Origin: Zygnema circumcarinatum SAG 698-1b
Taxonomy: Eukaryota > Plantae > Zygnematophyceae
Reading direction: 5' to 3'
Length of the DNA: 64,000 nucleotides
Assembly (NCBI GenBank): GCA_037447605.1
Contig: CM074806.1
Coordinates: 2,294,001-2,358,000 of the forward strand
Positions 13,340 through 35,600 of this stretch are shown here, piece by piece (positions within the stretch are counted from its first letter, which is position 1; each line of letters starts with the position of its first letter). The notes beneath the pieces were generated by a model that saw only the letters and a list, made by a program, of their open reading frames with translations, was not told the DNA's origin and made no database searches. The position numbers and the translations under genes were made by a program.

Positions 13340-16300
13340 TTATCGTATTGTCCCTTGTAGGTTTGCACCCCCCAAGTTTGCTCCTTCCAATATCTGTCGG
13401 TCAAAAGGAGCGAAACAGGTAGTGGATAAAATAAGCCGAGACATCCTTGAGAATCAAAAAGCATAACGAGGCAGACAGGCACTCCCTTGCAGTCTGCTTA
13501 AGTCACGACGAAAAAGAGCCGATTCAAATCAAGTTCCATCACCTTTGCGAGAGTAAATTTTCGCACTGACATTACGTCCAAGGACCATATCTGATTACAA
13601 TCGATAGTGAACGTTCCCCAGCAGGTATGGGTGGAGGGAGGCACTCACTGTGTCTCGAAGGTCAACGTCTCGCAGGTATGCGCGCTGCAGATTTGCGCCT
13701 TTCAAGTTGGCTCCGTTCAACGTTGCAGTCTGTCCATCAACTCCCCCCCAAACTGCAATAGGATGAAGAACTCCAAAGAATTGTCTCCTAAACGACAGAG
13801 AAGGCAATCTCGTCATTAAGTTGTTCTTGCCAATCCAGAGTCACCCTGAACAATGATAGGAAAAGGACTCGGAATATGACGGCAGGGAAAGATAAAGCAC
13901 AGAGGAGCAGGAAGGGACAACGGCGACATATTCGCACACCTTCAAATTTGCACCTTCCAGGTTGGCGCCTGACAAGTTAGCGTTGCTGAGGTCAGCGTTC
14001 TGTGGTAAGCCCCACACAGATCAGGTCAAGGGAAAGGAACAGGAGAGAAAGGATGACAGCGATTGGGAGAGAGAGACTGAAAATGGGAGGGACAAAGCGA
14101 AGGCGAATAATGGAAAGGAAGGGTTGGTAGATAGCCGAGTCTTGGCACTTAAAACCAGCAAGAATTGCGCTGCTACAGCAAAATCCTCAACAGCATCTAA
14201 ACAAGCAGAAAGAAATAGCTGGGAAATCAGTGAGTATACTGACCTGCAAGTGAGCTGAGCGCAGATCTGCTTCCACAAGACTTGCCCCCTCGAGACATGC
14301 GTCTGTGGAGAGCAGCGGCGTGGGAGGTGGTCAATATTCCACAGAGAGTTCAGTGCACCTCCCCATGAGAGGGCTTGCCTTGATGATGATCGGACTCAAC
14401 CACAGGAGAAGTTCTTCCATCTGCGGCTCGCTTAAAGCTGGGTATTGCTTGGTTTTAGTTAAGCGCGAGTGTGAAATATTGTAGGCTTTTCAGGTTCTTT
14501 AGGTTGTTGCATTGACCTCCCGGTTTTTCATATTAATGGATGCAAGTAAAGGACGCTCACCTTGCATGTTGGCAGATTGCAGCGACGTGCCAGCTAACAT
14601 CGCCCCACGAAGGCTTGCCTTTTCAAAATCACATCTGACCCAGAATGCTCGCGGTCCATGCTGTCATTGCAAGTCTAAGAGGAAACTACTTCCTAAGTGA
14701 CAATCCCATTATGTCCCCTATCTTCGCCAGTTGGAGTCAACCTTTTTGGCGACTGACATCCATAAAGAACTTTACAATACATACAGTCCTCGGACTACTA
14801 AAGCTTCAAGAAGAGATTCAAGTTCTCAAACATTCTTGGGAGACTTTAGAAAGGGTGGGCCAGGTCAATAGCATGATGAAAAAAATACGAATGGAAAACT
14901 GCCAGGCCATACAATGCTCAACCGTACATGGGAGGAAGAAAAAAAAGATTACTCATTCAGAAGTGCGTTGAGGAAGTTGGATTGATCTGCCTGTGCCTCC
15001 TGCACCAAAAACATTAAAAGCAAGTAGCCTCCATTAGAGCAAGTTGAGAGAAATGATTAAGCTACGGATGGTGAGAGGCATGAGGGACATAATGATAGGG
15101 GAGTGCAGCTCTGATGCAAAAATAGACAAAGTGACTCCCACTCCGAGGGTTACACTGCCCATGCGTATCTATATGTATTTTTTTTTGCCAAACGGTTAAA
15201 CGGAACACTACAATTCGACTTTAGAAGTTACAGATTAAGCAGTTGAATTTTGTGATTGGCCTAGAAAGGTCTAGAACCACATATAAGCAACCAGCCACCA
15301 TCTCCAAAAGCTTCAATGCAATGTGAACACAGTTTTCTCACCCTGAAAGAGGCTTTATGTAAACTTGCTCGAGAGAAAAAAGTACCAACAAGACGAGAGC
15401 AGCTGAAGTCAACTTTATTGAGGTCCTGCCCCCCTTAAGCAACCCAGGTCCAATCCGATACTCATCAGGTCTCTAAAAGTCCATTGTTCAGCAACGGGCA
15501 ACGTGGATACTTTTTTCATCGTCTTCGCGAGCCGCAAGACTACAATGTCACAACGTGGAGATTCCAATTGTCCCAAGCACAGGATAGAAATGATCCATCT
15601 CAAGTACGAGACTAAGAAACAAACACAATCAAGGCAAAACCTGAAATTAAAAAACAGTACTTTTGACTTTTTCCGACTTAGACTTTTGACTTTTGAGTTT
15701 TTTAGTCAAAGCTACAAAACAAGGAGAAAATACTCTAGAGTAGCATCAATGACATGCTGAACTTAATACTACTACACACAAAACAATCCCGACCTTGACC
15801 TGTCTCTCTGTCTTGTCAATGCCTTTCTATTGTCGAGATCACACGAGCGTCTCACCAGCCTCGAGAGATCGAGTCCACTCAAATTGACCCCGCGAAGACG
15901 CACACTCGCGTTCTGAAGGCATTTCACCACCTGTTGCAGCAACCCATCACAAAATCGCATTATCATCGCCGCCATGCAACCTGACAGCAAAGAAGTTCTG
16001 ATCACTCATAGCTACAAGCACGTGCGGCACAGACCCACACAATCTCTACCTGAGGCATGCACTAACAAACATGCCACCAGCCATCCGCGTGCGTACAACA
16101 AATAAATTCTAAAAGCCTTCTAGCTAATCTGCTTCTTCCCAAGGGCTCAGCAGCGAAAGTACCTCTTTTCGAGTGAGCTCAGGCAAGTCTTCATCTTCAC
16201 TGTCTCTTCTAGTCGCTGCTGTTAAAGCATTCATAAACTCCTGCAGAAAGTTACCCAGCCAAGACCAGTCACTTGCAGTAAGGGGCTGCACTTCTGATTG

Positions 16301-18673
16301 AAGGAAAGAAGCCTCTAGATTGTGGAATCCAACATTTAACAATACAAGATTTCCAGAATCTGTACAGATGGGGAAAAGCGATTCGCCAAGTTTTTTCTTT
16401 CGAGAGTTCTTTGTGAAAAAGTAATGCAACATTCACGATGCTTCAGGCCAGGTCCAAAGCATACGATCATAACCGACAAGCCTCCCATTCAGAACATCCT
16501 TTTCCCAGGGTAATCCAGTTTGCTCTTCAGCAAAATTCGACATCATGTCAAGCCCATTTACCAGGAGAAATCGATTGGGCATTTTCAGTAGCAAAAGTTA
16601 GTCAGATTTGGGATTTCAACAATTGTAACAATGAGAGTAACCTCCAAGTAATCACGATGCAAGATAGCAATTGGAAAAAGATACTGAATCTGCATTTGAA
16701 GGTTGGGATTGAGCCAGTGTTCCCAGTACCCCATGTACCTGAGCATCATCTCCCTGCTCTTGTGATCTGCCACAGTTACCTTCACTACTTTCCAGCTTTG
16801 GTTACCAATGCCTCGAGTGCTTACTTCAACTCTGTTTACGAATATCTGCCCACACACAGATAGCCTTCTGGAAGTATCCCACACATTTGGCTGCTCACCC
16901 TTAGTTGGAAAAACTCCGCCTCACGATAAAGTTCATGGTAAAGCGGGCCATCCACCAATGGCACAGTTCCATCACGCAGCCAGTTGAGAATGTGCCGAAA
17001 GTGAGTGCCATCTCTGTCGATGAACACAGTCCCCTGCATTCAAACAGGTGTTTGTACTACAGGCACCTGAATTACTGGGCAGTTAATCTACTTCAACCAT
17101 GATTCACAAAGACTTACAAAGTTGAAGAATTTCTCCGCTTTCCATTATTCCATCACAAACAGGATTCAAGAGCAAAGATTACTTCCAGCTATGCACCTTC
17201 AAGCATCAACATGGGAATGCCGAGAAGCCGTCGGACCAGAAACGACATTTTGTCCTGTTTTATTAGACATTCACTAGATGCGTGGTCGGCTGAACTTATA
17301 TTAAAGAAGACAGATTGTCAGCCTGATGCACTCACGGGTCAATCATAAAACTCAACATACAATAGGCACAAGAATTCAGGTACCATATTGATCCACGCCC
17401 ATCCCCCATCATGTTTTGGCGGGAGTGAAATTGATGAACTGGTTAACATAATTAGTGCGCCCCCTAGATTTACTGAGTGATTAGTGAGCATATGCCTTTT
17501 AACCAGCATCAGCCATACCAAAAAGAGTGTGATTCCTTACTGTTTCCGGATCAATATTCACGTGATGTCGACCACTGAACATTGCGCAAAGCATCGACTC
17601 CGTGTCTCGTAGCATTAACGTGTCCCTCATAGTACAATGAATTACTCCCCCTGCCCAAAATCAAGCCCTCCCAACTAACAAATTACAAAGAAAAATCTCT
17701 GGAGCGGACAGTTAACTGTTTTGCATCAGTGCAACAAAAGACAAAGCACTGACTGAACAAGCACAAGCAGCAAAGCACATCTATCCTTGGACAACTCCAG
17801 TGCTCGGCCAGTTCACTCATGCTGCGCATAATTCGGAACTCTCTGCCTATAAAATCTGGAGTGCTTTCCAAAAGCCACAAGGTTGCACACACAACATATC
17901 TAGACCAAAAGGTTCGGGCTATTCCAGTTTCCAACTTTCTTGTGTACGTAAGCAATCGGCAAGACACGTTGACAGGATAGGCATCAAACGACACAATTTT
18001 CCTCTTGAGGGGAAAAAACCGATTAACTTAGGATAGTCCACAAAAGGTTGAAAGATGAATGACGGAACATTGCAAGGGATTCGTAAATTGTCAGAAAATT
18101 GAAGAAGCAGTCCGAATCTGCGCAATGTGACAAATTCCTGGCACTGACTCGCCATTACTCAACTTCTCAAGGTATTGGGAGCTCTATGAGAAAGTAACGG
18201 ACTGAGTTTTTTGACAAGTAGCCAGAAATACATAAGTAAATCCAGACCACACATAGGTGAACATATAATTATGAGCTGCTGCTGTAAACAGAGTGCGAAC
18301 CTGTTTGGGAGGATAGTGGAGTCGAGAAAGGACGACAGTCTAACAGCTAAAGCCTTGCGAGGTGAAGCCCAGCTAACTGTAAGGTAAGCGGGTTCTAATG
18401 GTGGGGATGATAGTCAATTGGGCAAGAACGATGACAAAATCCAAAATTAATGGGCTTGATTGCAATGTTTACAGTGTAAGAGTCGCCGACGAGACATTCC
18501 AGAAGGGGCATTCAAATGCCATACCTCCTAATTTCAATGCGTCTCCTCACTCATGCGCCACACAACATCCAGAACTTCTCTTGCCTGCTTGTGCCCTATA
18601 CAAAAGCATTTAGGAACTGACCAACATCGAGGCGCAGCTTCGCAGGAAGCTCCTGACCGTTAGCCTGCGTCAT
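13340..18673 (-). CDS. FIP2: FIP2-like BTB/POZ (KCTD-type) plus pentapeptide-repeat protein, about 12 exons (approx. 18673-18622, 17650-17541, 17033-16899, 16240-16163, 15930-15856, 15425-15342, 14999-14953, 14634-14561, 14302-14244, 13999-13940, 13729-13649, 13393-13340)
   Basis: MTQANGQELPAKLRLDVGGVIHCTMRDTLMLRDTESMLCAMFSGRH...GTVFIDRDGTHFRHILNWLRDG...LYREAEFFQL, then A(N/D)LxG pentapeptides (NADLSNANLSGANLEGANLK, GANLKGANLQRAYLRDVDLRDT), ending ILEGANLGGANLQGTIR*. Confidence 0.9.
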
Positions 18674-18970
18674 TACTGCTGGAATGCGATGACCGCCCTT
18701 CTTCTCTTCCGCCCGAGTCGACTGATCTGAGTTGCACGATTACCCTCTGCTGCACGCAAGCGTGGCAAGCGGCAGGCAGTCCCGCTGCAGGCCCAGGCCT
18801 GAACCGCCCTGCGCGGGCACGAGCAGTTTAGAAGGGCAAGGCACCCTTGTCCCCCTCACGACCGTACGGTACGGTTCCTCGGCTTCCTGTCATCCTGTGA
18901 CAGCAATCCTGTCAACTGAGAGGGTACGGTCTGCATTCCGTGTACAGTCAGCAGTCCTCATATTTTCCAC

Positions 18971-19847
18971 GGGTAACTCTACTGCACCCCCGCGTTTTGT
19001 CTTTCGCACCCCCGTTTTGAAAATCTTTCCTGCCCGTTTTGGTTACCCCCCAGTTTTGAATATTTCGGGAAAAAATCTTTTTCCCGCCCCTTTCGTCCCC
19101 TCCGCTGCCCCCTGTTGCGAAACGCGATAAAACGTATGCTCATTCGTTTATGTCCGCGGTTGCCTTTTAACGGTAAAGTTTATGGGTGGGTACCGGGAGG
19201 TGTCGAGTTCGGTTGTTTTCATTCCCCCTCCCTTCATTATTTTTTGGACATTCCATCCCCTCGTTTTCTCCTTTTCACTATTGACTTCCAACAATGTGCG
19301 ACAAAAGAAAAGGGGATTTGCATTGGTCTCAAGATGGTGAGGCCATCAAATAAACATGGACAAAGTCAGCATGGGAACCACAAGAAATTAGTCGCAAATG
19401 AAACAAGCACAAAATAAAAAAGCTAGGGACAAAAAACTAAACTAAGCTTAAGTACAAAAACGCAACCTTAAACACAACTGCAAAGGTCACCAATGTTGGG
19501 CAACTGTTACTCTCTGTTTTCAGGTTACCGCTAATTAAGGCAAGATCTTAAATTGTGGCCTGCTTGCTTGCAATTGGAACATTTTTTCCCTTCAACGTAC
19601 TCGAAATAGCTCTTGTCCCGGCTGATTGCCAAACTGCGCGCGCCAGGAGGTCGGCCTCGTTCCTTCATAACCGGGTGAAGGTTTTGCAACTGCAATGGTT
19701 CGAGGGGGGGCAGCGGAGGGGACGAAAGGGGCGGGAAAAAGATTTTTTCCCGAAATATTCAAAACTGGGGGGTAACCAAAACGGGCAGCCAAAATTTTCA
19801 AAACGGGGGTGCGAAAGACAAAACGCGGGGGTGCAGTAGAGTTACCC
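18971..19847. mobile_element. Mutator-like (MULE) non-autonomous element, 877 bp, ~140-bp TIRs, 9-bp TSD ATTTTCCAC
   Basis: GGGTAACTCTACTGCACCCCCGCG... (18971-~19111) is inverted at ~19708-19847 with only a few mismatches. The left TSD is at 18962-18970; the right TSD is displaced to 25061-25069 by the next insertion. Confidence 0.9.
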
Positions 19848-20359
19848 ATTTTTATAGATCCGTATTATACACTTTGAGGTTCGATACAATGTATAATACA
19901 GTATTAATACTGTATTATACACTGTATAATACCTTAACGCAACTGTTAACAGCCGTACAATGAGAACATAGATCCGTACGGAAATTAGGTACGGAATGGG
20001 TGTACGAACCTGTACGGACCAAGTCACACGTGTTGAGTGTTTGGCAAGTGACGTGACTTGGCAAGTGCTGGAATTTCAATATTATAATCAAATTTTGTTC
20101 AACTAACCACGAAAATAAAAAAAACAACAGGCTGCGGATCAAGATCCTCGTGCGTTGCCTTTTTATAGAAATGTCTTCGAACCTTAATTATGTGAAGTGA
20201 ACTGAAACGGAAACTGATCGAACACATAAGCTGTTTAATTTTGTGTTCTGTTCAGTTGCGCGAGGTGCGATTTAACCAATTAGAATGCACCACGTGGCCA
20301 CTTTTAACACGCTGCGACACATACCCTATTTACAACAATACGTCCCGTAAAACATTCAA

Positions 20360-20812
20360 AACGAACGCTGTCGTACATAGAAAACGACACGTGGCAATGA
20401 CAGAATGGGAGCGCGATATACCCCTTTTTCTGCGCATTCGATCCAACGAAACGCACAACCAATCAGGACGCGCGACGTGGCAACGTCAGACTCGCGGCAA
20501 CTATACCCCATTTTCATTAAATCCATCTTTGACAACCTAACCGAATCCGTACGCCACATAAAACATCAAAATCGAACGCTGTCGTACGTAGAAAACGACC
20601 CGTGGCAATGACAGAATGGGAACGCGATATACCCCATTTTCTGCGCATTCGATCCAACGAAACGCACAACCAATCAGCACGCGCGACGTGGCAACGTCAG
20701 ACTCGCGGCAACTATACCCCATTTTCATTAAATTAATCTTTGACAACATAATCGAAGCCGTCGTACGGATCAAAACGATGACTAAGCTTTTGCCTACGGC
20801 AACGCAAAAAAG
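20360..20812 (+). repeat. Two tandem ~211-bp units; a third diverged direct copy lies at ~24728-24953
   Basis: Shared core CGCGATATACCCC...GCATTCGATCCAACGAA...CGTGGCA.CGTCA.ACTCGCGG...TATACCCCATTTTCAT. Confidence 0.85.
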
Positions 20813-22971
20813 GGAGGTTAGATTTGTACCGTGATGAAGTGACAGAAATTCCACGTAGCTTGGCACAGCAGAAACCAACGACGTCCAAGCCGAACTGAAC
20901 GCAAATGATCAACGAACAAAACTATTTATTAAGTCACATCAAATAAGGCTGTCGTAACAATGGATTCGGCAACGGCTACCGTTTGTCAAACTACAAATAG
21001 AGCTGTTACGTATCTGTCAAACACGACACGGTACGTTAGAGCGGTTTTTAATTTGACCAACACGATGACCGTTTCGGGCGTTGTCAACCGAACCATTCCA
21101 AATCTTGCGTGTCCATAGTTTGACAACACAAGCTGTTACGGTTTACCAACACATACCGGTACAAACATCCCGTTTCAAGCATTGTCAACCGACAATCACA
21201 ATCCTGCGATTACAAAAATCGTACAAAAATGGACCCACATCCTCGTCCACAACGATTGTCCAAATACAGCCGTTTCGTGCCAGTACGGTGACGGCGACGG
21301 TTGACCTACCGATTGCCCTCCCGTTGTAGATCCTTTGACCGTCAGGTCTCTTTCGCCATTTTCCGGCTGCCGTCCGTACAGCCGTTCGTTCAGATTCGCG
21401 GACCCACGCATGAGTGGTCCACATGGCACCACTTGATTCGTAGCCGACATTCGGAGGCGACTCCACTGACGCTTCTTTCCGCCGCTTCGTTCGTCGCGCG
21501 GGCGCGAACAAAAATTGACGGAAAAGGAAAGTTACGAAAGTCAACAGGCCAACCGGTCGGCCGCGCGTCGCATCTGCGCGTCGTATGCGCGTGTCGCATG
21601 AACGACGTCGCCGGTGTCGCACGCGCGCGTCGCGCGGGCGCGACACGGCTAGTCCACCCGCCGAACGCGGTGAACCCGCTAGATACCTCTAGCGCTGACA
21701 CACGACGGTGATCCGGCCACGTGGCGAACCGCCACGGGCTAGCAAGAGCCACGCGGCGTCTCGCCACTGGCCAGCCCTGCTTCACGGTTATTGTTCCGCC
21801 TTTCGGCGGCGCCGCGCGCGCGGGTCGGCCGCGCGTCGCATCTGCGCGTCGTATGCGCGTGTCGCATGAACGACGTCGCCTGTGTCGCACGCGCCCGTCG
21901 CGAATTTTGCACCGTCCGATCAGCCACTATTGATTCATGATGACGTCAGCCATCCCTCGCTGCGAGACACCGCGTAGTCGTGACGCCGCGTGGAGCCGCG
22001 CGCCACGCGTGCCGCTTCGGGCATTGTCAACCGACAATCACAATCCCGCGATTACGAAAAACGTCAAAAAAAGAGAACCGACATAGAGCCAAATAGAGCA
22101 GTTTCGTCCCTGTACGGGGACGTCGACGACGTTTCGATGACGAAACTGCTACGGAACAACAGCGATATCATCTTCCCCTATTCTGCACCACCTCCAGACT
22201 TCCATTTCTTACACTCGCCTGTCTAGCTGAAGAGTTGCTGGTGGTGCTTGCTGCCGTTTTGTTCCGAAATCTACCGTAACCAACACTTATGTCGCAGCAG
22301 GAACATGGAGTGTGGTGAAAGGATGAGGAGGGCCCTTTGGATGGCGCCCACTTGGAAGGGAGGAGGCCTTTGAAGGGGGAGGGGGCAGCGCCATGGAACG
22401 GGAGAGGGGAGCGGCAACGGAGGAGGAGGGGGAGGGGGAGGAGGAGGAAGAGGGACGAGTGACGGGTGCTGAGGTTTTCTTTGCGTCCACGTCCTCGGAG
22501 AGGTGAGGTTGAGGGCGAAGGGGAGGTTTTTGCGTTGAATTTGGTGTTGAAGGAGGGAGGGGGTTGGCATGTGTGAGTGAGGGAAGGCAGTGTAACCAAC
22601 ACTTATGTCGCTGCGAATTCTCTGCCTTTCTGCTGCTGCAGCTCTTGCTGCATTTCTTCCTACCAGAGAAATGCGAAAAACCGAAAAATAATGATTGGTG
22701 GAGGAGGAGGAGGAAGGAGGAAGGAGGGAGAAGGAACATGGAGTGTGGTGAAAGGGACAATGGTGGANNNNNNNNNNGTGTCCGTCAATCAGTCAGTCAG
22801 TCGGTCGTCGGCCAGTCTGTGAGTTAGTCGGTTTGTCGGTCGGTTTGTCGGCCAGTTCCTGTGTCTGTCCGTCAGTCTGTCGGCCAGTCCGCCAGTCCTC
22901 TGGACTATAAAGACTTTGTCTGTCGGCTAGTCCGCCATTTTAAAAACCTCTTATGTGGAATTTTCGATTAA

Positions 22972-23268
22972 GATAAGGTTTGTATCTATAATTATTTTCA
23001 TATGTAAAATGACAAATAACCATACTTTGATTTCTGAAGGACCCAGTCCTGGAGATAACGAAATTCCAAAACACCGATAAGGTTTGTATCTATGTTTATT
23101 TTCATATGTAAAAAGACAAATAACCCTAATTTGATTTCTGAAGGACCCAGTCCTGGAGATAACGAAAATCAACACACCGAAAAGGTTCGTATCTATGTTT
23201 ATTTTCATATGTAAAATGACAAATAACCGTACTTTGATTTCTGAAGGACCCAGTCCTGGAGATAACGA
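22972..23268 (+). repeat. Minisatellite, about 3 x 104 bp
   Basis: TTTGATTTCTGAAGGACCCAGTCCTGGAGATAACGAA occurs three times at ~104-bp spacing, and the intervening sequences are also near-identical. Confidence 0.9.
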
Positions 23269-26200
23269 AGATCGGAAAGAGCGGAAATCGTCAAACTTGG
23301 AAATCCGCATCAAAACAGGTTCGTACTTCAATTTCTCATTCCTCCCACTTTTATAGTTTTCAGAAAGACAGAAGAGTTGTAGAGGTAAACCGGTAGGAAG
23401 AATGGTAGAAGACAGGAGGAAGAAAAGAAAGAGAGAGAGAGAGCTTTTACCTTTTTTTTTTTCCTTTTCTTTTTCTTCTTTAATAATGTTTTAGTTTTTT
23501 TCCATTATGTGAGTGTCGGCGTGTGTGTGGCTATGTCTGTATGTTTGTCTGACTGTGCGCATTCTTTTATCTGAAAATAGAAAAAAAAAAAAAACAAAAT
23601 AATATTACAACAGAAGGCCTAATGTTGTAATAATGACATTGTTTTTTTTTTTTTCTCTGCGAGTGTTTTTGTGTGCGGCAGAATTTGCGTGTGTGATTTT
23701 TCTACAAATAAGAAAAAAAAAAAAAAAAANNNNNNNNNNAAAAAAAAAAAAAAAAAGGAAACAAACTACTACACATAGGGCCCTATGTTGTATAGTTTTT
23801 TTTTTTTTTTTTCGACTGTGATGATGTTTGTGCGTGTCTCAATTTGCGTGTTAGACTAAAAAACAAGGGTTTTTATGATTTCTTAGACATTTTCTATTTA
23901 CAAGATTTTTAGGAATTTTAAGATTTTTAAGGTTTTACATATTTAGGTTATTATTTAGGTTTTTTAGAAATTTTATAGATATTTTAAGCATTTTTAGCGC
24001 TTTTACAATTTTTTTAATCTTTCAGAATTTTTACAGTTTTTAGTCAGTCCGTTAGCTTGTCAGTTTGTCGGGAAGTCTGTCAGTCTGTCCGTTAGTCAGT
24101 CATTGTCTGTCGGACGGTATGTGTGTCCGTCTGTCGGTCAGTCACATGGAGTGCGGGCAGTCTGCTTGAAGTTAGTGGGTTTACGTAGGTGGGTTTTGTC
24201 GGCCAGTTCGCGTGTCACGTCCCGTCGGTCAGTCGGCTAGTCACCGATCCTACAGACTATAAAGACTTTGTCTGTCGGCCAGTCCGCCATTTTAAAAACA
24301 TCTTACGTGGAATTAACGATAATATAGAAATTGAAAACATCGATAAACATAAAAAATTATTGGCAACGTGGCAACACTTGATTGAATAAAATAAGACCCA
24401 TTTCCTACAAAAAATCAAGAAAACACGCAACACCCACGTCGCAATCTCTGACTGGATAACACGTATACCACATTCCGTTCCACAATCCAAAAAAAAAAAA
24501 AAAAAAAAAATTTTTTTTTAAACCACACACAAACGGCGGCGAATGATGTGTCTCATTACGTCGTCAAGGCTAATGTCAATATTTCGATTTTTCCCATTTA
24601 GGCTACGTGGCAACCACCGACTGGATAAAAAACATACCCCATATCCTACAAACGATCCAAAAAACACCACAATACCAGCGTGGCAATTTCTAACTGGATA
24701 AAAGCATAACTGAATAGCGTTTCGTTTCAGCGCTGTCGTTGAAACGAAACGTAATATAATACATAAATACGCGATATACCCCATTTTAACGCATTCGATC
24801 CAACGAAGCGCACCAATCCCGAGGACAGCGGCGTGGCAGCGTCACACTCGCGGAAATTATACCCCATTTTCATCAAAATCATCTTTGACACCTTAATCGA
24901 ATAATCGTACGGATGAAAACGATGACAAAGCTTTTGCCTACGGCAACGCAAAAATACGTTAAATACATTAAAAATACACTGTATTTTTAAAATGTTGTAT
25001 AATACGCATGTATTATACAGTGTATTAATACACGCGTTTGATACATACGGATCTATACCCATTTTCCACCCTGTACAGTGCGTCCCCAAGAAATTCGCCC
25101 CGATTTTGCCGAAACCACCTTTTTGTACGGTAACTCTGTGTTATCCGTACTAACCGTACTATCCGTACCCCTAAAACCCTAGAACCCTAGAAACTGTAGC
25201 GTAACGGAGCTGCGTTCGACGGATCCGCGTCCGGTCAGTTGTACTTGACATATTCATATTCAGTGTCACGGACCGGCATAATCCAGGAGTTGCCGACGGA
25301 GAATGCGCAAAGGCGGCGCCATGTGTTGGCGGCCGCGGGCAACACACCATCCGGCAAAGGCGCGCACCGGAGCGCCCGCATAATACCGCCGATTATGCGT
25401 TTGTTGACCTGCTCCGAGGAAGTCTCCCGCGTGAAGTGATCAAGCCTCTCACCGGTGGCGGTTATTGTCAGAGGCCCATCCACCGCTAAGACTCAGGATC
25501 TCTTGTCGGTGATAAGTAGATGGGATGTCAGTGATGCAAGTTTGTCTTTTAGTGCTGGGCTTAGTATTTATATTTGTTGTGTGGTTTGTTGTCTTGTTCT
25601 TCTCTTCTTCCTCTTCAGTTCCAGCAACAGATGCTAAGTGTGAGAGAGAGAGAGAGTTCCATGCCATAGATAGAGAGAGAGAGAGAGAGAAAGAGTCTTC
25701 GTGCTGATAGCATTTAGACGTCCTATTCAGCCCAGCTAGACAAAGATTTCAGTGAGAAGATCCTTTCATTGTAATGACTATCCCGATAACATTTGGGGTG
25801 ACTTTCCAAAATACAACCTTTATCTAAATTGAGTCTGTTTTTCCTTCTTTGTCGCTATGCCAGAAGCTACCATCTTGTTCTATCTGCCTTGCATCCCTCA
25901 ATATTGTGATAACCCGGCCCTAGCTAAGAGACCGAGGAGAGGGCGAGGGGAAAAGGAAACAGGGAAGGGCTCTTTCGCATAGAGTCCGGCCGCGTTGGAA
26001 CATCACCGGGATCCCTACGTCTTCGGCTAGCGTACCTCTGAGAATCTCAGGATCACGGCTCTATCTTTGCCATGAACCTGGGACCAACACAACCCTTCAT
26101 CAGTTTCAGCACGGACGCGCGAGTGGCCGTACAGCACCTGCAACTAGCTCAGCAGTCTCCTCTTAACCCCACTTATCTTGGTATCAGAGCGGAAGGTTTT

Positions 26201-27568
26201 GCAGATCCACGTACCTTGATACGTGAGGCTGCCGATCCTGTGACCCGTATCACAGCCGCCATGGATGAAGAGCTGCAACAAGAGGACAGCAGTCTTCATG
26301 AGTATTCCAGATGAAGACTTGGGACGCTCAAGAAGAAACGAGCGTCCAGGAAATCAAGACGGTCAATTCAACGGAAGGAAAAGCGATGGGAAGGCGAAGA
26401 TAGGCATCACGAAGAACCGCCCTTGATGCGGCACCTTGGCGGTCGACTTCGATTGAAGTACGGCCGACTCATCTGGCGGTGATGGCCGTAAACTCGGCGG
26501 CAGCAATATACGCGCCCGGATGATCAAGCTTCGCGGCCCTGCCCGGTCGGCTGCCGCCCCGCCGGTCACGTGAAAGAGAAGGAGTGCGTTCGAACTGAGG
26601 TCCCCACGCGGCCACGGAAGGCAGAACCCGCGGGATCTCGGTCCGGATGCTTCTTTGCGGGGAGTCCTTCAAACCGCAGCCGATCGCGCAGCGGTCCTCG
26701 GCGAGCAAGGGATTCCTCGGAGACACCCTCACCTCGGCGTTCACAACTTACCCATCCGGCAGCGGGCGGCGGCCCGAGGGGCAAGGCGGAGACGTCGCAA
26801 AAGGACCCTCCGGCTTTTCGCACCAACTGCGGAAGAAGCTGCGTATGAGATCGAGTTTCAGCAAGATGGGAAGAGATGATGACAGCCGATAGCCATGATT
26901 CACGAAAAGAGTGGTGAGGGATACCATGGGCATCATCACTAGAGGTTTCACCGTGGCGGGAAGATCACCGAAGCACAGTACGGTTTATCGCGAGGAGAAA
27001 GCGGCGCCGTAAGCGAGCGAAGAAGCCCAGTGGATCAAGGCTGGCCCTTGGGCTGGAAGAGGCGATCAACTGGAAGCTGTCGAAGCTAACTTTCAGCGGA
27101 TATGCGTCGGCAGCGACAAGGGACACATTCAAGCAAGCTTTGGAACAACGCTGGATTTGAGGATCAATCAGCGTAACTGGCCGACTTAGCTACATAGAAG
27201 TCTTCTGATGATGGCGGTATTGAGATTCTTGGCGTTTAGATGCGCATGGCAAATACGATAGAACGCCCGACTTTCGAAGTTCTCTCTGGTGGTTCGCTTA
27301 AGGCCATCGGCCGAAGGATCTCCACGGATGCGTGGTGCGACAACCCACTGGCCGAGATGCCGGGCATTGTTAGAAAGAGGCGGGCGAATTGAAGGATCAA
27401 GAGAGGCAACCGACATGCGACCACATTACATAGATGCTACGAGATCCGCGACAAGATGGAAGCTCTGCCAGCGGTTCACGAAGACGGGGAATCGGCGGTT
27501 AGCCCTACGCTACATCGCCGGGAACAAGCGGCTTTCTCCATCCACCTTTCCAGGGCGTCGGGCGGCCC

Positions 27569-28237
27569 GTGAGATGCGGCCTCACGGCTATAGCCAGGAC
27601 CAAGCCCCTTCCCCTTTCCCCATACCCTCATGATCCTGCGCATCCCATTGAGCCGTCGGTGAATCCTCACATACCCGATGTTTCTCGTCCAGGATATCGG
27701 GGTCCTTATTCCGATCGCACACCCGAAGAGAGAGAAGCTGCTAGAGCCGATTTGCGCCGTCGGATGACAGAGGCAGGGGTTCCAGAGGGCGTTTGTCTTG
27801 CCTGCGGCCTGAATCATAATCTGCGGCTGCGTTGTGGACCATGGACCTGCACCTTCTGCCAGATCACGGGACATGATGCCCGTGTGTGCATGCGGAGACT
27901 TTCAAGCGAGAAGGCCCGAAAGGGGAAAGAGGCAGCTCCAGGGAGCTCACCTGCAGAGATCACCTTCATGGACATGCTCCCGGCTACTCACACACCACCG
28001 AGAACTCCGGCTCCCTTTAGCTTGCCTCCACCTCCTTCTACCCCGCTTATACCATCACAAGGCGTCGCCCGTTACATACTGCCCCATGGAGTCCCCTTCG
28101 CCCGACAAGCGCGCATTAAAGGCGAGCGTCGGCTGCTGCGCGCCCTTTTCACCTGGGTGCCCATTACAGCCCGGCAGTGCGAATCACCATCAGTGCGAGG
28201 GTGCTCAGAAGCGGGATTCGCCGGAGTACTGCCTTGA
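27569..28237 (+). pseudogene. gag fragment with zinc knuckle(s)
   Basis: CTFCQITGHDARVC (CX2CX4HX4C), preceded by CLACGLNH...C and followed by a proline-rich linker. Confidence 0.75.
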
Positions 28238-29699
28238 GCTCCTATCCACCAAAGCGATCCTCATGCTCATCCCTGCCCTTCCTCCCTGCCAATGCCAGCG
28301 GCACCGGCTCCTCTAGCACGGCTCCGCGATTGCGCCGCACGTCCGGAGGGCGGTCCTCCCTCGCCCCAGTCATCCCTTAGGATCCATGCTGAGGAGAAGC
28401 TGCGGTGATGAGGAGGGGAGCAGCGAAGCCTGACGAGCCCGGCGGCACGGCGTACGGAAGAAATGCATCAGCCGCCTAAGCCCACCGGGCAGCCCACGTT
28501 TCTACCCCAAGCAACCCGATCGTGACCACCCCGACCAGACGGCACGTCACTGATTGAGCATGGTTCATCCGGCTCATGGGAACAAGGCTAAGATCGGCGT
28601 ACCTTGTCACGATTGATCTTGTTTGAGGTACCAGTCTTTGCAGCGTCGGATGCGTAAGCTGGCCCGGCGGTCACGAGGCCACCTGTGGCCTCCACGGTTC
28701 CATGGCACCTCCTCCGGACATCCCTCGTAGGCGAATGCTCCACCACATAGCCCGGCGCCTCTTCGGACCCGGTTAAACTCTCATGCATCCTCTCGCCCAG
28801 TTCCGTTCTTCCTCTGATCCCAGCACCCAGCGTCGCGAATCATTGTCCAATGTATGGCTAAGCAGTCATCAAGCAAGAAAGCCATGATCGACAGGAGCCT
28901 ATCTTGCCTGATTCACATCCAAGCCGATTGATAGCAGAGAGGCTGCGAGGGGTTAAGTTGAACAAGGCGTACCGAGGCCATTCCCGATATGTGGGGGTTG
29001 AGGGGAGCCTACATGAAGGATTGGGCAGTGCCCAAGTGATCATCAGCCTTGGCGAGATGGGAGCCACGGTGAATGCGGTCATCACGGCCGTTGAGCACTA
29101 TTCTATCTGCGGGGCTCAGTTGGCTCATTAGATAGAACCTGCGTCTGACTTTGCTACATGTCGGTGCACTTATCTGGCTGGCCGGGAGACCCATTGCTCT
29201 TCCCATCATCCTCGGTCCCTTGCCTTACCTCCGCCTTCCCCAAACGCCACGCCACGGCGCAGGTCTCCTACCCAGAGATCACCATGTACCATTCTGTCGG
29301 CAGCCCCCATTCTTCCTATGGATCGGCCAATTCTGATACCGATGGCGAGACTTCCCCTCCTGCTCCCCCGAATCCAGCCCTCTGTGCGCCGACGGAGGAA
29401 CTTTTGCCGCCGATGCTTTCATTTTGCGCAGCTTCCCGGCCAGGGCAAAAGCCGGTGATGAAGAGTGGTGGAGATAAGTCGAGATCACGATTAGTGGCGT
29501 ACTGAGACCGATCAGCATTCTCCAGCTTCGCCAAGTCTTTGCGAAATCACCTAGTTTTTAGCGCGACATTCACTTCGACATCGGCAAGACCCACGGTGGA
29601 AGCACCATATAGATGCGAGTGCACCTCCGTGACCATGACTCCCTAAAGCTTTCCGCCCGCTCGGCCGGGCGATGTCGAGCAACCGGTCGATGAAGCGTG

Positions 29700-32018
29700 G
29701 CAGCCCGGCTTGATGGGTGCGGAGAAGGGCCTTAGGCCAGCCACGGCCAGATTACGCCCCAAAGCGGATGGCACACTCGCTTCACGTGAAGGCTATGTCC
29801 CGGAAGCGAATGCCGCCGGTAGGATCGCCTCGTTCTGGGATGTGGACCTGATTCTCCGCGGCGTCTCCCCGAGGACCCGATGGTTCGGCCACTGGACATC
29901 ACGAGATCGCGCCTGGCGGATTCCCCTGCTGACGGGCCGGTATTTGCAAAACGAGGGGGCTGCGCACAGCCACCGCAGCAGTAAGGTGTGACGGTGCTTC
30001 GCTTTAGGCTCCAGGAGTCCAGCCAGACTCACCGGCCGCGTAGCCAGGTGTCGGCCACATCGCGCCTTCTGCTTGAGCTGCCCGTGAATGATGCATCCCT
30101 CACGGCAAGGACTGGTCCTCCCACCTGCAACACATTGACCAAGTGCTTCAACAGCTCATTAGTGCGCGTTTGAAGATTGCACCCAAGAAGTGCAAATGGG
30201 GCCATCAGGAGATCACTCATCTCGGGCACCGCCTCGGCATCAATGGCCTGAAACCATCACTCGACAAGATTGAAGCGATTGCCCTTATGCCGATTCCACA
30301 GACCCTCACTCAGCTCAAGTCCTTCTTGGGGCTCACCTCATTCTATCGCCGGTTCATCAAGGGCTATGCCCTTATCGCATGTCCCTTACATGCTTTGGAG
30401 AAGCACGGAGCCCAATACGAATGGAGCCGAGCGCAGGATTTGGCCTTCCACCCCCTCAAGAGGGCCCTCCTTCAGCCCCCTTGTCTGCATCAATTTGACC
30501 CCACCACGCCCAACCATCTCATTGGCCGTACATTTGGAGTCGGACGGGACTGGGGGCGTGCTTGATCAAGCCTTAGCTTCTGGGATAAGGGAACACCCGG
30601 TCGATTATGCTAGCGAGGGTTTGTTAGGAAGCCGAGACCAAATGCCCGACCCTGCGAGGGTGGCTGGCCAGTGATACTCAGGCAGCAGAAGTTCAAGCTC
30701 TTTACAGCCTACCAGCCCATTATCATTAGGACTGACCACATGCCACTCACTTGGCTGCACATCATGGCTACCCTACGACCTAAGTTTGCACGATGGGTGA
30801 TGAAGTTGGAGGAGTATAATGTGCTCAAGGTCACCCACCGTCCCGGCCGCAGTCACGGCAATGCTGACGGCCTCAGTCGCAATCCTTCGGCTCCCCTCCT
30901 CTGTCACGATCCGGCCGTTCCTGAACCCATCCCTCCACCCACCCTCTTGAACCCTGAGCATCTTCCCATTGAGATTTTTATTGCCGCTCAAGACTTGCAT
31001 GATGTCATATTCGCAGATGGGCTGATCGATATTCCGGCCACGGCCACCACCCTCCATCCCGGCTGGGAGGGGACCCCAACTACCCGGCCACCCCATGCGG
31101 ATCGTAAGGAACTCCTGTGGATGACGATGGTGAAGCTCCTGCTTCCTCCCCATTTCGGCGCCAATGGCGTCCATTGAAACCTCCCTTAGCGCTCACGTCA
31201 CTGACCAGCACATTGCCCCTTGCCACATCCGCGGACACGAGGTCTCGGTATCGCCCAGCGCTGGAGAACTATACTGTTGATGATGAAGGGCAATTCTACA
31301 CTTTCGCCTCCGGCCTTCTGTTCGCTTTCCCCAACGGCGCATGGAAGTGCGGGCGTAAGCACGATTCCGGCCGGCGGATTCCTGCCTTAGCTTGAAGAAG
31401 ATAAGGTAACCCTAGCTGCCGGGAGGCCTTTAATTGTGACCTCCCATGTAGCAGCGGTAGAGCATATCCCGAAACACTGCACCCGTTGCCAGCAGCGGCA
31501 AGCGCTCTGCTCCCCGACCGCCAACCACGGAGATGGGTGAGATCCCATCTGGCGTCGTCGAAAGATTGAACATTGACACCTTTACATCCCCGGCTTCGGC
31601 ACCCCCCTCTGGCTACATTCGGGTCTTCCTAGCCGTGGACAGATACACCAAGTGGGTAGAAGTTCATACGACAGAATCTAAGCATTCCATCCACTCTGCT
31701 CGCCTCCTGACGGCCATCATTCACCGCCACTCTCTACCCTACTCTGTCCACTCTGACAACGGCACCGAATACAAGGGGGCATTTGCCAAGCTCATGCAGG
31801 ACTTCCGCATCATTCACCACACCTCTAGCCCCTACTCCCCCTGGCAGAATGGGCTTGCAGAATGTACCATACAGACGGTCAAGGATGCGTGCGTTCGCGG
31901 CTGCGCGGAGCTGGAGGCGGACTGGCGCGAGGTCATCCCCTCTCTGGTCTTCACGTACAACACCTCTGTTCACTCCTCAGCTTCTCTCCCTCTGAGGAGC
32001 TCCCTCTATGGCCCGTAA
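29700..32018 (+). pseudogene. pol fragments: reverse transcriptase, RNase H and integrase (broken frames)
   Basis: LKIAPKKCKWGHQEITHLGH...QLKSFLGLTSFYRRFIKGYA (RT/connection); TDHMPLTWL...ARWVMKLEEYN...HRPGRSHGNADGLSR (RNase H); IDTF...VDRYTKWVEV...SDNGTEY...SPYSPWQNGLAE (rve integrase). Confidence 0.9.
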
Positions 32019-33132
32019 GCCCGCATTCCCCTTGACACTCCTCTGCTGGAAGGCCCTCTTCTACGATGGCCTTACTCCCCGGATCGGTCGCCAAGCTTAA
32101 ACTCTGGCCTCAAGCTTCAAACCCTAGATTCCATGGCCTCCCACCACCGAGCCTTGCGAAGGCGACAACTCACCGACTGCAGGGGCCCGTATGTGCCACT
32201 CCCGCTTGATCCCTAAGGTGGGTGCCGCGTGTCAGCTCATTTGGCTCGGGAATCTCGCCAAGCCCGACTCGCGGGCTTTTCCATGGTTGGAGCCCCTTCA
32301 TTTGTGGCCGATGCGTCGAGGAAGTCGAGGATGGGCCATCATTTCGAGCCACGACTCTGAGTAAGGAAAAACGCCCGTGACTGGCGTTCTAACTGGATGC
32401 GACGACCGATGCGCCCGTCGGCGTTTCCTCCCCAGCGTGGCGGGCGTTTCTGCGACCCGGCAACCTTGGTCTCCTCATACCCCTGCCATACCCGACTCTT
32501 CATTGGTCATTTCTAATTCCGCCACTTTTGCCGCCGCCAACTTATTCGCTTTGTATCGGCCGTACCGCTGATTTCAATTTAATGCTTACTCCCTCCTCCA
32601 CCTCGGTCTATGAGTACTCCCCATTGCGAATGTCTGGGAAGCCTCCCACCACGGCCACCGACTGCGCCTCCGTCCACGCGTCATCGCGGCTCCTCCCCAC
32701 GCCCTTTGTCTCTCTTCTTCCTTTAGCGCGGCTCGCGATGCGCGGTATTCCCCGGCATGTACTCACGGATGGCGGCGTAGCGAACTTCGTTTAGCGGATC
32801 GCGTCCGTCGGTTGGCCGCGGCATATTCATATTGATGTCACGGGCCCGGCGCTAATCCGGGGAGTTTACCCGACCCGGAGAATGTCACGCAAAGCGGCGC
32901 CATGGTGGCGGCCGCGAACGGCACACCCGTCGGCAAAGCGCACTTTCAGGCGCGCCTTAATGCCGCCGATTATGCGTTTGTTGACCTGTCCGAGAATCTC
33001 AGCGTAGTGAGTCAGGCCTCTCGGTGAAGCTGATTGGCCCAATCGAGAGGCCATCCACTAAGACTTCGGAATCTCATGCGGTGTCATTAGATGGGATGTC
33101 GATGTCTGCAAGTTTGTCTTTAGTCTTTGAGG

Positions 33133-33605
33133 CGTAGCGCTATACATGGGTTGTATGGCGAGTACTTACGTATCAGCGGTTGCCTTTTAATGGTAAAACA
33201 GCGGTGTAGATGCCCAGGGAGGTCACGAGAGTTGAACACTAGCTGCTTGGCGGGGTTCGTTATTAGTATCGAGCCAGGGCCGGTATTTGCAATCCACCCC
33301 AAAAACACCCGTGATCTCGAGCATGAATGCGGATTGGCCCGAGTCGAGCTGATCCAGCGCTATGACCCAGAGGAGTGAGCGTATATTTGGGCATGTGTGG
33401 GAGCTTGAGCAGCCTTTCGTGAAAAAACCTTGGCTAGCATTTCGAGGGCGAGCCGGTTTAGGTGGGGAGAATGTAGCGCTATACATAGATTTAATATGGC
33501 AGTACTTACATCCTTGATTTGCCTTTTAATAGTACCCAAAGCACTGGTGTAGATGCAAGGGAGGTCTGAGAGTTGAACCTAGCTGCGAGGCAGGTTACGT
33601 TACTA
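33133..33605 (+). mobile_element. TRIM-like miniature LTR element (~470 bp) inserted in the Gypsy 3' LTR
   Basis: Absent from the 5' LTR. Direct repeats of ~130 bp (33133-33263 and 33472-33605) both begin (T/C)GTAGCGCTATACAT; PBS-like TAGTATCGAGCC follows the first and PPT-like GGTGGGGAGAA precedes the second. Confidence 0.72.
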
Positions 33606-35600
33606 TGGAAGCTTAGTATTTGTATTTCTTTGTGTGGTTTGTTGTCTTGTTCTTCTCTTCTTCCTCTTGAGTTCGACTAACGGATGCTAAGTGTGAGGGA
33701 GAGAGAGGTTCCATACCATAGATAGAGAAAGAGAGTCTTCTTCAGCATTAGCATTTAGGCGTCCCATTCAGTAGCTAGACAAGATTTCGATTGAGAAGAT
33801 CCTTTCATTGTAATGACTATCCCCAGCCAACCGCTGGCTGGGGTGACTTTCCAAAATACAACCTTTATCTAAATTGAGTCCTGTTTTCCCTTTGCTGTTA
33901 CTATGCCAAGCTACCATCTTGTTCTATCCTGCCTTGCATCCCTCCCAATGACCAATGATAACTAGAAGCCTAGCTAAGAGACTAGCCGAGGAGAGGACAG
34001 GGGAAGAGAGCCCCCAAGGAAGGGCTCTTTGCGCATNNNNNNNNNNCGGTGGGAACATCTTCAGGATCCCTACGTCTTGCGCGTACCTCTGAATCTCCCG
34101 GATCCTGGCTCTATGCTGCAGGCAGACCCACAGGACCAACACAACCCTTCATCAGTTTCAGCACGGACGCGCGAGTGGCCGTACAGCACCTGCAACTAGC
34201 TCAGCAGTCTCCTCTTAACCCCACTTATCTTGTGCTACAAAACCCTAAGACCCGTACTAGCCGTACTAGCCGTACTTGCTGTACTAGCCGTTACGGGCTT
34301 CAGCAAAACTCACCGAATCTTCCCGCACGTGCCGCCGTAAGAGGCGCTCGCTCGTCTTTCCTCCTTTTGGCTCCGATACGACACGATACGATACGATACT
34401 AGACGACACGGTACGATACTGTACGCTATTATACGGTACGATACGTACGGTTCAACATGAACTCTAACAATACCGCCCGTCTATTGGTAACACGAACCTT
34501 CTATTTGCAAAAATCAATATTTTCGCCTCATATTTGCCAAAACCATGGCGAAAATATGAGGACTGTTGACTGTAGTACGGCGGGCTGTACGGTTTGCCTC
34601 GACTGCTTTTGACATGGAACCCCGAGGGGCACTCTGGAGGAGACGTGCGCAGCAGGGCCCAGTGCAGGCACAGCTTCATTCTGGTGTCATTCTGTTTGTT
34701 CGCAGGAGTGGTGTGCATGAAACACGATCTACACGTTTGCGAATGCAATGTAACTGATAAAGAGTTTTGAGGGTGACGAGGGGGAGGATTTCGCAAACGA
34801 GGGAGGAAGGAACAAGCATGAAGGCAAGTGGACGGCCTCATGGTCTCTCCGTCCCCATTCGCTCTCCTCTTCCCCCTTTCCTCCCTGCCCTCGTATCTCT
34901 CAGTGGTCGACCTCTCTCTATTCATCTAGTTGTCATTATTCTTCTCTCTTCAACTGCGTGAGATAATACTTGGGAGAGATTTCACATACGGTTGACCAAG
35001 TTAACCCAAAGAGTGATCAACAGCATTAACAAGATATAGGCGGTATAATAACTTTGCAATAGAGCAAGAACAACTTATTGATCTTCCAAGGGCACGTGGA
35101 GACCTTAAAGCATGTGGAATCCATTGACCGTGTCTGTGCCTGAAGGCTACAACACTTTTAGAGTTTCAGGCCCTGTAGGGTCTTCGGGGTTTCTGAAGAG
35201 TTGCTTTGTCAAAAGTCAAACTCTCAAACGCACCACTTTTTAAAGCAAGAAAAATACTGGAGGCTATGAGAGATTGGTCAAATACAAAGATTGTTCGAGC
35301 AGTGGACATGAGCAGTAGACATAGAAGAGGGCGACTTTAGAAAATGTCAGTATGACAGACAAGTTGGTGAACCTTTAGCCCACACTCATCACGTTGTACA
35401 GAACCTGTACAGGCGGGCAGGTTCCCATGCAGAAAAAGCTTGCTTCTCTCCACGAAAAGAAGACTCCATCTTCATTAGGTGGCAGTACGGATGCATTAAC
35501 ACACTTCTTAATTCTGTCAAATCATACGAAAACCTCCTGAAAGCTGGGCTCCACTCCTCCAGTATTTCCTTAAATAAGCGGCAGGCAACTCCGCGTGGGT

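What the first reader, a model, noticed from the sequence alone, without database searches (positions are those of the whole stretch)
18943..34574. Five-element transposon nest: a ~480-bp MITE expanded to 15.6 kb directly upstream of FIP2
Seen in sequence: removing the layers restores clean junctions. (1) TA-flanked CAGTCA...TGACTG TIR pair at 18945/34572. (2) A 140-bp-TIR element with 9-bp TSD ATTTTCCAC, inserted at the inner edge of the left TIR of (1). (3) A TATAGATCCGTAT-TIR element with 8-bp TSD CCCATTTT, inserted across the right TIR/TSD junction of (2). (4) A Gypsy element with TSD AAAC. (5) A TRIM-like element in the Gypsy 3' LTR. Established knowledge: TA, 9-bp and 8-bp TSDs with these termini indicate Tc1/mariner, Mutator and hAT. 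Inference: the order is mariner > MULE > hAT and mariner > Gypsy > TRIM; two independent insertions into one tiny MITE, plus two more into those, suggest a hotspot about 270 bp upstream of the FIP2 ATG.
Basis: partly seen in the sequence, partly recalled or inferred. Interest (0 to 1): 0.8.

Follow-up and report, generated by a model that had tools for sequence, protein, structure and literature searches.

The report
Ordinary five-layer transposon nest
A small mobile element about 270 bases in front of a gene was hit one after another by four other mobile elements and now spans 15.6 kb. The structure is real in the sequence, but stacked transposons like this are a well-known, ordinary feature of plant-type genomes.

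Summary

- **Outer MITE:** TA-flanked, 23-bp terminal inverted repeats (TIRs) matching 22/23; 480 bp once reconstructed.
- **MULE-like element:** 877 bp, 142-bp TIRs, 9-bp target-site duplication (TSD).
- **hAT-like element:** 5.2 kb, non-coding, 13-bp TIRs, 8-bp TSD.
- **Ty3/Gypsy element:** decayed, 4-bp TSD, inserted inside a telomere-like repeat.
- **TRIM-like element:** about 470 bp, present only in the 3' LTR of the Gypsy.

The inferred order is logically forced by the split TSDs. The FIP2-like gene (BTB plus pentapeptide repeats) is on the minus strand, and its ATG lies 272 bp from the nest.

Three things are not shown:
- The superfamily labels rest on TSD and TIR rules alone. No transposase was found and no other copies could be looked for.
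- The TRIM has no clean TSD.
- A "hotspot" is neither needed nor testable here. Promoter-proximal insertion preference and survival of insertions inside existing transposons explain the pile-up.

Only the internal logic argues against a misjoin.

Earlier notes of this scan list other multi-superfamily nests in this same algal genome.

One oddity is new. The hAT-like target site copies a motif that recurs five times inside that element.

The parts
18943..18944 (.). Left TA target-site duplication of the outer MITE
   Evidence: Sequence
18945..18970 (+). Outer MITE, piece A (26 bp). Left TIR at 18945-18967; left copy of the MULE TSD ATTTTCCAC at 18962-18970.
   Evidence: (I7)
18971..19847 (.). 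MULE-like non-coding element, 877 bp. 142-bp TIRs at 18971-19112 and 19706-19847, 98% complementary.
   Evidence: (I1)
19845..19852 (.). Left copy of the 8-bp TSD CCCATTTT of the hAT-like element. It consists of the last 3 bases of the MULE TIR plus the first 5 bases of the MULE right TSD.
19853..25057 (.). hAT-like non-coding element, about 5.2 kb. Perfect 13-bp TIRs, subterminal GTAT(A/T)ATAC repeats, internal 211-bp and 103-bp tandem arrays. N gaps at 22768-22777 and 23730-23739.
25058..25069 (.). Right copy of CCCATTTT (25058-25065) followed by CCAC (25066-25069), which completes the MULE right TSD.
25070..25194 (+). Outer MITE, piece B (125 bp). It ends in telomere-like CCCTAR repeats and the left AAAC (25191-25194).
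25195..26178 (+). 5' LTR of the Ty3/Gypsy element. It starts TGTAGC and lacks the terminal 9 bp seen in the 3' LTR.
26179..26190 (+). Primer-binding site TGGTATCAGAGC
   Evidence: Complementarity to the initiator tRNA-Met 3' end is from my own knowledge.
26191..32770 (+). Decayed internal region. RT end about 30116-30235, RNase H about 30422-30817, integrase core about 31602-31964. Many stops and frame changes.
32771..34239 (+). 3' LTR, ends GCTACA. It is interrupted by the TRIM-like insert and holds an N gap at 34037-34046.
33133..33605 (+). TRIM-like insert, about 473 bp. Direct terminal repeats at 33134-33265 and 33473-33605. A purine-rich tract lies just before the second repeat.
34240..34243 (.). 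Right AAAC copy of the Gypsy TSD
34244..34572 (+). Outer MITE, piece C (329 bp), with the right TIR at 34550-34572
   Evidence: (I7)
34573..34574 (.). Right TA target-site duplication of the outer MITE
13598..18673 (-). FIP2-like gene (BTB_2 plus pentapeptide repeats). The proposed ATG at 18673-18671 is 272 bp from the MITE end.
   Evidence: Exons were searched one by one and were not joined.

Best explanation
This is a true nested pile of five unrelated mobile elements, built by successive independent insertions.

1. A 480-bp TA-flanked, Stowaway-type MITE landed in the intergenic space 272 bp upstream of the FIP2-like start codon.
2. Long ago, a Ty3/Gypsy retrotransposon integrated into a telomere-like repeat inside the MITE, making a 4-bp duplication.
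3. The Gypsy then received a TRIM-like element in its 3' LTR.
4. Much later, a long-TIR MULE-type element cut into the inner edge of the MITE's left TIR, making a 9-bp duplication.
5. Later still, a non-autonomous hAT-type element inserted across the MULE end, making an 8-bp duplication.

All the DNA elements are non-coding and must have been moved by transposases made elsewhere. The Gypsy is dead.

The pile-up needs no special hotspot. It reflects two things: the known preference of class 2 elements for promoter-proximal open chromatin, and the fact that in a gene-dense region, insertions into an existing transposon are the ones that survive selection.

Shown: the ends, the duplications and the order of events. 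Inferred: the superfamilies, the relative ages and the cause of the clustering.
For: - **TIRs and TSDs are exact and unique in the window**. The chance of an exact flank match is about 4e-6 for 9 bp and about 1.5e-5 for 8 bp.
- **The split MULE TSD is restored only by removing the hAT-like layer**.
- **Removing the Gypsy rejoins a CCCTAR repeat in phase**.
- **The RT-RNase H-integrase order plus a PBS mark Ty3/Gypsy**.
- **The TRIM is absent from the collinear 5' LTR**.
- **Relative ages:** LTR K2P distance is 0.10-0.16 against 0.02 for the MULE TIRs.
- **No other transposon-like repeats occur in the other 48 kb**, apart from one tandem-repeat block.
- **Literature:** TSD rules and the promoter peak of non-coding class 2 elements (PMC3579700); Mu preference for TSSs (PMC2774946); frequency of nested insertions (PMC3903597).
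- **Earlier scan notes** list other nests in this genome.
Against: - No read evidence.
- No second copy of any element was seen: none in the window, and zero in two metagenome scans. Mobility of each family is therefore inferred from structure alone.
- The MITE TIRs (22/23) look fresher than the old Gypsy inside the MITE would predict. About 2.5% of cases would look this fresh if both decayed at the LTR rate.
- The hAT target resembles the element's own internal motif. Plain random integration does not explain that.
Confidence: 0.78

Rival explanations
1. A true local insertion hotspot: something about this site, such as the MITE's GTAC- and telomere-like motifs or the FIP2 promoter chromatin, actively attracts integrases and transposases of several superfamilies.
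For: - Two independent hits fell in 480 bp, while the other 48 kb of the window holds no comparable element.
- The MITE has about ten times the window's GTAC density and three AACCCTA motifs.
- The Gypsy sits exactly inside the telomere-like run.
- Genic Mu hotspots near TSSs are known in maize (PMC2774946).
Against: - This is one locus, picked because it looked odd, out of more than a thousand scanned windows.
- The two hits are far apart in time.
- The other two insertions went into the 0.9-kb and 9-kb elements already present, not into the MITE.
- Selection against insertions elsewhere in a gene-dense region gives the same picture.
- Other nests are noted elsewhere in this genome.
Confidence: 0.12
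2. Assembly artefact: one or more layers are created by scaffold misjoins at the N gaps.
For: - Three N10 gaps lie inside the nest.
- Nothing in the sequence ties the two sides of the gap at 22768-22777 together.
- The last 100 bp of the two LTRs are 100% identical while the rest is diverged. That could be a polishing or collapse effect.
Against: - The contig sides carry matching halves of exact TSDs and TIRs: 8 bp, the 4-bp completion of a 9-bp TSD, and the 23-bp outer TIR. A random misjoin would not give that.
- The 3' LTR stays collinear with the 5' LTR across the 34037 gap, with about 13 against 15 bases.
- The 23730 gap sits inside a poly-A run.
Confidence: 0.04
3. The hAT-like layer was not placed at random. 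Its target was chosen, or the insertion was repaired, through similarity to the element's own internal motif (homing or homology-assisted insertion).
For: - The right end plus TSD plus the next base reads CTATA-CCCATTTT-C.
- The same string with one extra C occurs four times exactly, and once more with a different last base, inside the element, all in the same orientation.
- CCCATTTT occurs only four more times in the other 58 kb.
Against: - It is a single insertion, and the match was noticed after the fact.
- The perfect terminal TIRs with an exact 8-bp direct duplication are what ordinary transposase integration gives.
- No other copies were available to build a target logo.
Confidence: 0.1

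Closest known systems
Nested transposon clusters of plant genomes (for example nested insertions in maize and rice MULEs, PMC3903597; wheat chromosome 3B, PMC4290129)
   Same: Successive insertions of elements into older elements. The order can be read from split TSDs. LTR retrotransposons sit inside DNA transposons. The cluster is intergenic.
   Different: The genome here appears to be a streptophyte alga, according to an earlier scan note that I did not check. The shell is a very small MITE close to a start codon.
Stowaway-type (Tc1/mariner-derived) MITEs
   Same: TA duplication, TIRs of about 23 bp starting CAGT, under 500 bp, non-coding, close to a gene.
   Different: There is no family consensus, no known autonomous partner and no copy number. 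The interior is rich in GTAC and telomere-like motifs.
Non-autonomous Mutator-like elements (MULEs)
   Same: Long TIRs (142 bp), 9-bp TSD, insertion near the 5' end of a gene.
   Different: No transposase and no relation shown to any known Mu TIR. The TSD does not fit the weak maize consensus SWNNNNNWS (PMC2774946).
Non-autonomous hAT elements (Ds-like)
   Same: 8-bp TSD, short perfect TIR, subterminal short repeats confined to both ends.
   Different: TATAG fits the YARNG terminal rule at only 4 of 5 positions, and the target does not fit nTnnnnAn (both rules are from my memory). There is no trace of a hAT dimerisation domain. The target copies an internal motif of the element.
Ty3/Gypsy LTR retrotransposons and TRIMs
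   Same: TG...CA LTR ends, PBS, RT-RNase H-integrase order and a 4-bp TSD. The small insert has terminal direct repeats and a purine tract.
   Different: The Gypsy is heavily decayed and its 5' LTR end is truncated. The TRIM-like insert has no clean TSD and no clear PBS.

Membership tests
Tc1/mariner-derived (Stowaway-type) MITE | 2-bp TA target-site duplication | tested here: met
   TA at 18943-4 and 34573-4
Tc1/mariner-derived (Stowaway-type) MITE | Short TIRs (about 20-30 bp) at both ends; small non-coding body | tested here: met
   23-bp TIR matching 22/23, unique in the window. 480 bp after removing the layers, with no ORF of note.
Tc1/mariner-derived (Stowaway-type) MITE | Multiple copies in the genome, and TIRs shared with a transposase-coding element | not testable with these tools
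   The genome is not available. None in the window; none in metagenome contigs.
Mutator-like element (MULE) | Long TIRs and a 9-bp (7-12 bp) TSD | tested here: met
   142-bp TIRs at 98% (I1). ATTTTCCAC is restored on the right once the hAT-like layer is removed. Rule from PMC10741241 and PMC3579700.
Mutator-like element (MULE) | MURA-type transposase, or TIR homology to an autonomous MULE | not testable with these tools
   The element is 877 bp and non-coding. No genome to search; zero hits in metagenome contigs.
hAT superfamily (non-autonomous) | 8-bp TSD with short TIRs (5-27 bp) | tested here: met
   CCCATTTT on both sides; 13-bp perfect TIR. Rule from PMC10741241 and PMC3579700.
hAT superfamily (non-autonomous) | Terminal YARNG and target nTnnnnAn consensus (from memory) | tested here: not met
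   TATAG matches 4 of 5 positions. CCCATTTT has C at position 2 and T at position 7. Both are weak statistical rules, not absolute ones.
hAT superfamily (non-autonomous) | hAT transposase or dimerisation domain remnant | tested here: not met
   No Pfam hit in nine of the eleven ORFs of 90 aa or more. The 70-aa-and-longer ORF translations, read by eye, show nothing transposase-like. This is expected for a non-autonomous copy.
Ty3/Gypsy LTR retrotransposon | Two LTRs with TG...CA ends, PBS, 4-6 bp TSD | tested here: met
   The LTRs are collinear. TGTAGC at the 5' end and GCTACA at the 3' end. PBS at 26179-26190. AAAC on both sides. The end of the 5' LTR is truncated.
Ty3/Gypsy LTR retrotransposon | Domain order RT - RNase H - integrase | tested here: met
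   RVT_1 end, RT_RNaseH(_2) and rve in that order at 30.1-32.0 kb. The RVT_1 and RT_RNaseH_2 hits fall below Pfam's cut-offs; RT_RNaseH and rve pass. The reading frames are broken.
TRIM (terminal-repeat retrotransposon in miniature) | Short direct terminal repeats around a short non-coding core, total under 1 kb | tested here: met
   132-bp repeats, 77% identical by BLAST and 85% in aligned columns. 473 bp in total.
TRIM (terminal-repeat retrotransposon in miniature) | PBS, PPT and a clean TSD | tested here: inconclusive
   A purine tract lies just before the second repeat. No clear PBS. The flanks TGAGG and TGGAA agree at only 3 of 5 positions.

The most novel reading that the evidence does not exclude
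The hAT-like family picks targets that look like its own internal motif. The 8-bp duplication plus neighbouring bases (CTATA-CCCATTTT-C) repeats a 15-base string found five times inside the element (four exact, one differing in its last base). That would mean sequence-guided homing by a cut-and-paste element, or insertion helped by homology-dependent repair, rather than near-random integration.
Probability: 0.1. Interest if true: 0.55.

Novelty: new member of a known kind. Interest (0 to 1): 0.2.

Why it matters
It matters mostly as annotation.
- The locus gives clean end definitions for three probably undescribed non-autonomous DNA transposon families, and for one Gypsy/TRIM pair, in what earlier scan notes call a streptophyte alga.
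- It shows that 15.6 kb now separates the FIP2-like gene from whatever lay upstream. Its working promoter must therefore fit in about 270 bp or lie inside transposon sequence.
- It does not change what is known about transposon nesting.
- Only the target-motif coincidence of the hAT-like element could lead somewhere new, and that needs the whole genome to test.

Tried and rejected
- **Sequencing runs:** I did not try further, so read laying could not be used.
- **Metagenome contigs:** scans with the MITE TIR and with the MULE TIR gave zero matches.
- **Exact-product look-ups:** look-ups for an ORF that spans the right MITE junction and for a nearby long ORF found nothing on record.
- **Word-index protein search:** the first exon of the GLTP-like neighbour gave no hit. 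Orthologous loci in other assemblies could therefore not be fetched to look for empty sites.
- **Earlier findings by sequence:** blank for the MITE and for the MULE.
- **RNA searches:** Rfam at gathering threshold found no family in the window. ARAGORN called no tRNA in the nest, so the tRNA-like block in the TRIM repeats is too decayed to be called.
- **Rejected reading, LTR end:** I considered that the LTR ends at ...CTTATCT and that TGTGCTACA is target sequence. That reading leaves no TSD and breaks the TGTAGC/GCTACA terminal inversion.
- **Rejected reading, hAT flank:** I considered that CCCATTTT is part of the hAT TIR. The two copies are direct, not inverted.
- **Spliced model:** the FIP2 exons were searched one by one by reference. 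The joined protein was not built.


Full report
**Observation.** I read both outer ends and all inner junctions and re-derived every coordinate by script.

- The outer pair is TA + CAGTCAGCAGTCCTCATATTTTC at 18943-18967. Its reverse complement, with one mismatch, is at 34550-34574.
- A search allowing three mismatches finds only these two sites in 64 kb. No shuffle gave any match.
- The repeat finder reports the same pair as I7, and reports the 142-bp, 98% complementary arms of the second element as I1.
- The terminal 29 bases of that TIR and the 13-base terminus TATAGATCCGTAT of the third element each occur only at the two expected places.

**Junction logic.**
- The MULE-like element (18971-19847) has ATTTTCCAC on its left (18962-18970).
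- On its right come ATTTT, then the hAT-like element (19853-25057), then CCCATTTT, then CCAC.
- Removing the hAT-like element and one copy of CCCATTTT restores GTTACCC + ATTTTCCAC, an exact 9-bp duplication.
- The hAT duplication contains three bases of the MULE TIR, so the hAT-like element arrived after the MULE.
- The MULE duplication overlaps the last six bases of the MITE's left TIR, so the MULE arrived after the MITE.
- The LTR element (25195-34239) is flanked by AAAC on both sides.
- After its removal, the MITE sequence reads on through a run of CCCTAR units in phase. This is an independent sign that the two flanks were once adjacent.
- The three MITE pieces add up to 480 bp.

**The N gaps.** Internal evidence is as follows.
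- *34037-34046:* the gap lies in the 3' LTR, which stays collinear with the 5' LTR across it (13 bases including the ten N, against 15).
- *23730-23739:* the gap sits inside a poly-A run with 17 A on each side.
- *22768-22777:* nothing in the sequence links its two sides.
- The left and right parts of the hAT-like element carry matching exact TIRs, an exact 8-bp duplication and the 4-bp completion of the MULE duplication. A false scaffold join would not produce that.
- The ends therefore belong together. The interior length and content are estimates.

**What the layers are.**

*hAT-like element.*
- It has no coding trace. Nine of its eleven ORFs of 90 aa or more gave no Pfam hit. The translations of ORFs of 70 aa or more, read by eye, look non-coding.
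- It is highly repetitive inside, with a 211-bp unit twice, a 103-bp unit three times and several dispersed direct repeats.
- The motif GTAT(A/T)ATAC occurs four times in the first 80 bp and twice in the last 62 bp, and nowhere else in the window. That is the pattern expected of subterminal transposase-binding repeats.

*LTR element.*
- It carries remnants of the RT C-terminus, RNase H and integrase core in that order. This is the Ty3/Gypsy order. The RVT_1 and RT_RNaseH_2 hits fall below Pfam's cut-offs; RT_RNaseH and rve pass.
- It has TGGTATCAGAGC just after the 5' LTR.
- Its frames are broken throughout.
- The LTRs align collinearly but are old. Identity is 85% and 91% in aligned columns for the two parts, K2P distance is 0.16 and 0.10, and there are about 60 indel blocks.
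- The 5' LTR lacks the last nine bases seen in the 3' LTR.

*TRIM-like insert (33133-33605).*
- It is absent from the 5' LTR.
- Its 132-bp repeats are as diverged (K2P 0.17) as the host LTRs.
- It has a purine tract before the second repeat.
- It has no clean duplication.

*Relative ages.* The MULE TIRs differ at 3 of 142 positions. The Gypsy and TRIM events therefore look old, and the MULE and hAT events look young.

**Context.**
- The FIP2-like gene is on the minus strand. Exons searched one at a time match BTB_2 and pentapeptide repeats.
- The proposed ATG is at 18673, 272 bp from the MITE end, with an in-frame stop upstream and a GT donor after the first exon.
- On the other side lies a GLTP-like gene on the minus strand (weak Pfam hit, below Pfam's cut-off). 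The nest therefore sits between the 3' end of one gene and the 5' end of the next.
- The rest of the window is gene-like and holds no other transposon-like repeat. The exceptions are a block of tandem and palindromic repeats at 39.2-41.2 kb and a pentanucleotide array at 12.0-12.4 kb.

**Mechanism and the hotspot claim.**
Typical TIR lengths are in PMC10741241.
- Non-coding elements of exactly these three superfamilies peak in promoter regions in four grass genomes (PMC3579700).
- Mu insertions concentrate at transcription start sites in open chromatin. Genic Mu hotspots are documented (PMC2774946).
- Nested insertions are common. [quoted passage not shown]
- Only two of the four secondary insertions hit the 480-bp MITE itself, at very different times. 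The other two hit the larger elements already present.
- In a gene-dense stretch, insertions into an existing transposon are also the ones least likely to be removed by selection.
- Earlier notes of this scan list other multi-superfamily nests in the same genome, which one follow-up calls an alga.
- I therefore read the pile-up as ordinary. A special hotspot is possible but unsupported.

**One unexplained point.**
- The right end of the hAT-like element, its duplication and the next base read CTATA-CCCATTTT-C.
- The same string with one extra C occurs four times exactly inside the element, and a fifth time with a different last base. All five are in the same orientation.
- CCCATTTT occurs only four more times in the other 58 kb.
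- By my rough estimate, chance gives this at about 1 in 10,000. I noticed it after the fact, and it is a single insertion.
- It could mean a target preference, fossil end-plus-flank copies inside the element, or repair helped by homology.

**A second oddity.** The last 100 bp of the two LTRs are identical although the rest is diverged. Gene conversion or a polishing effect are the obvious candidates.

**Verdict.** This is a tidy example of a known phenomenon.

Noticed in passing
window 19853-25065 (motif at 20502, 20628, 20713, 24776, 24858 and the junction at 25053): The hAT-like element's right end plus its 8-bp target duplication copies a 15-base motif, (C/A/T)TATACCCCATTTTC. The motif recurs five times inside the element (four exact, one differing in its last base), all in the same orientation.
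   Followed up: partly
window 26081-26180 and 34133-34232: The last 100 bp of the two Gypsy LTRs are 100% identical, while the rest of the LTRs is 85-91% identical with many indels. Gene conversion or an assembly or polishing effect could explain it.
   Followed up: partly
window 25070-25194 and 34244-34572 (the rebuilt MITE): The MITE interior holds 13 GTAC cores (6 of them CCGTAC) and 3 AACCCTA telomere-like motifs in 480 bp, about ten times the window density or more. The unique flanks just outside the MITE are also rich in GTACGG.
   Followed up: partly
window 19303-19398 and 50581-50678: A stretch of about 98 bp inside the MULE-like element is 77% identical, in inverted orientation, to a site 31 kb away. 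It may be a captured fragment or a shared older repeat.
   Followed up: partly
window 19153-19177 and 33173-33197: The MULE-like element shares a 25-bp block (92%) with the tRNA-like part of the TRIM terminal repeat. ARAGORN and Rfam call nothing there.
   Followed up: partly
window 39226-41160: A GC-rich block of 92-bp, 66-bp and 43-bp tandem repeats made of palindromic CCAATGGTTGCAACCATTGG-type units. The only ARAGORN call in the window (tRNA-Ala, 40097-40189) lies inside these palindromes and is probably false.
   Followed up: no
window 12000-12364: An array of 74 copies of the pentanucleotide GCCAT, just downstream of the FIP2-like gene.
   Followed up: no
window 3200-11450, minus strand: Long ORFs with RRM_2 and RRM_1 hits suggest a Mei2-like RNA-binding gene.
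   Followed up: no
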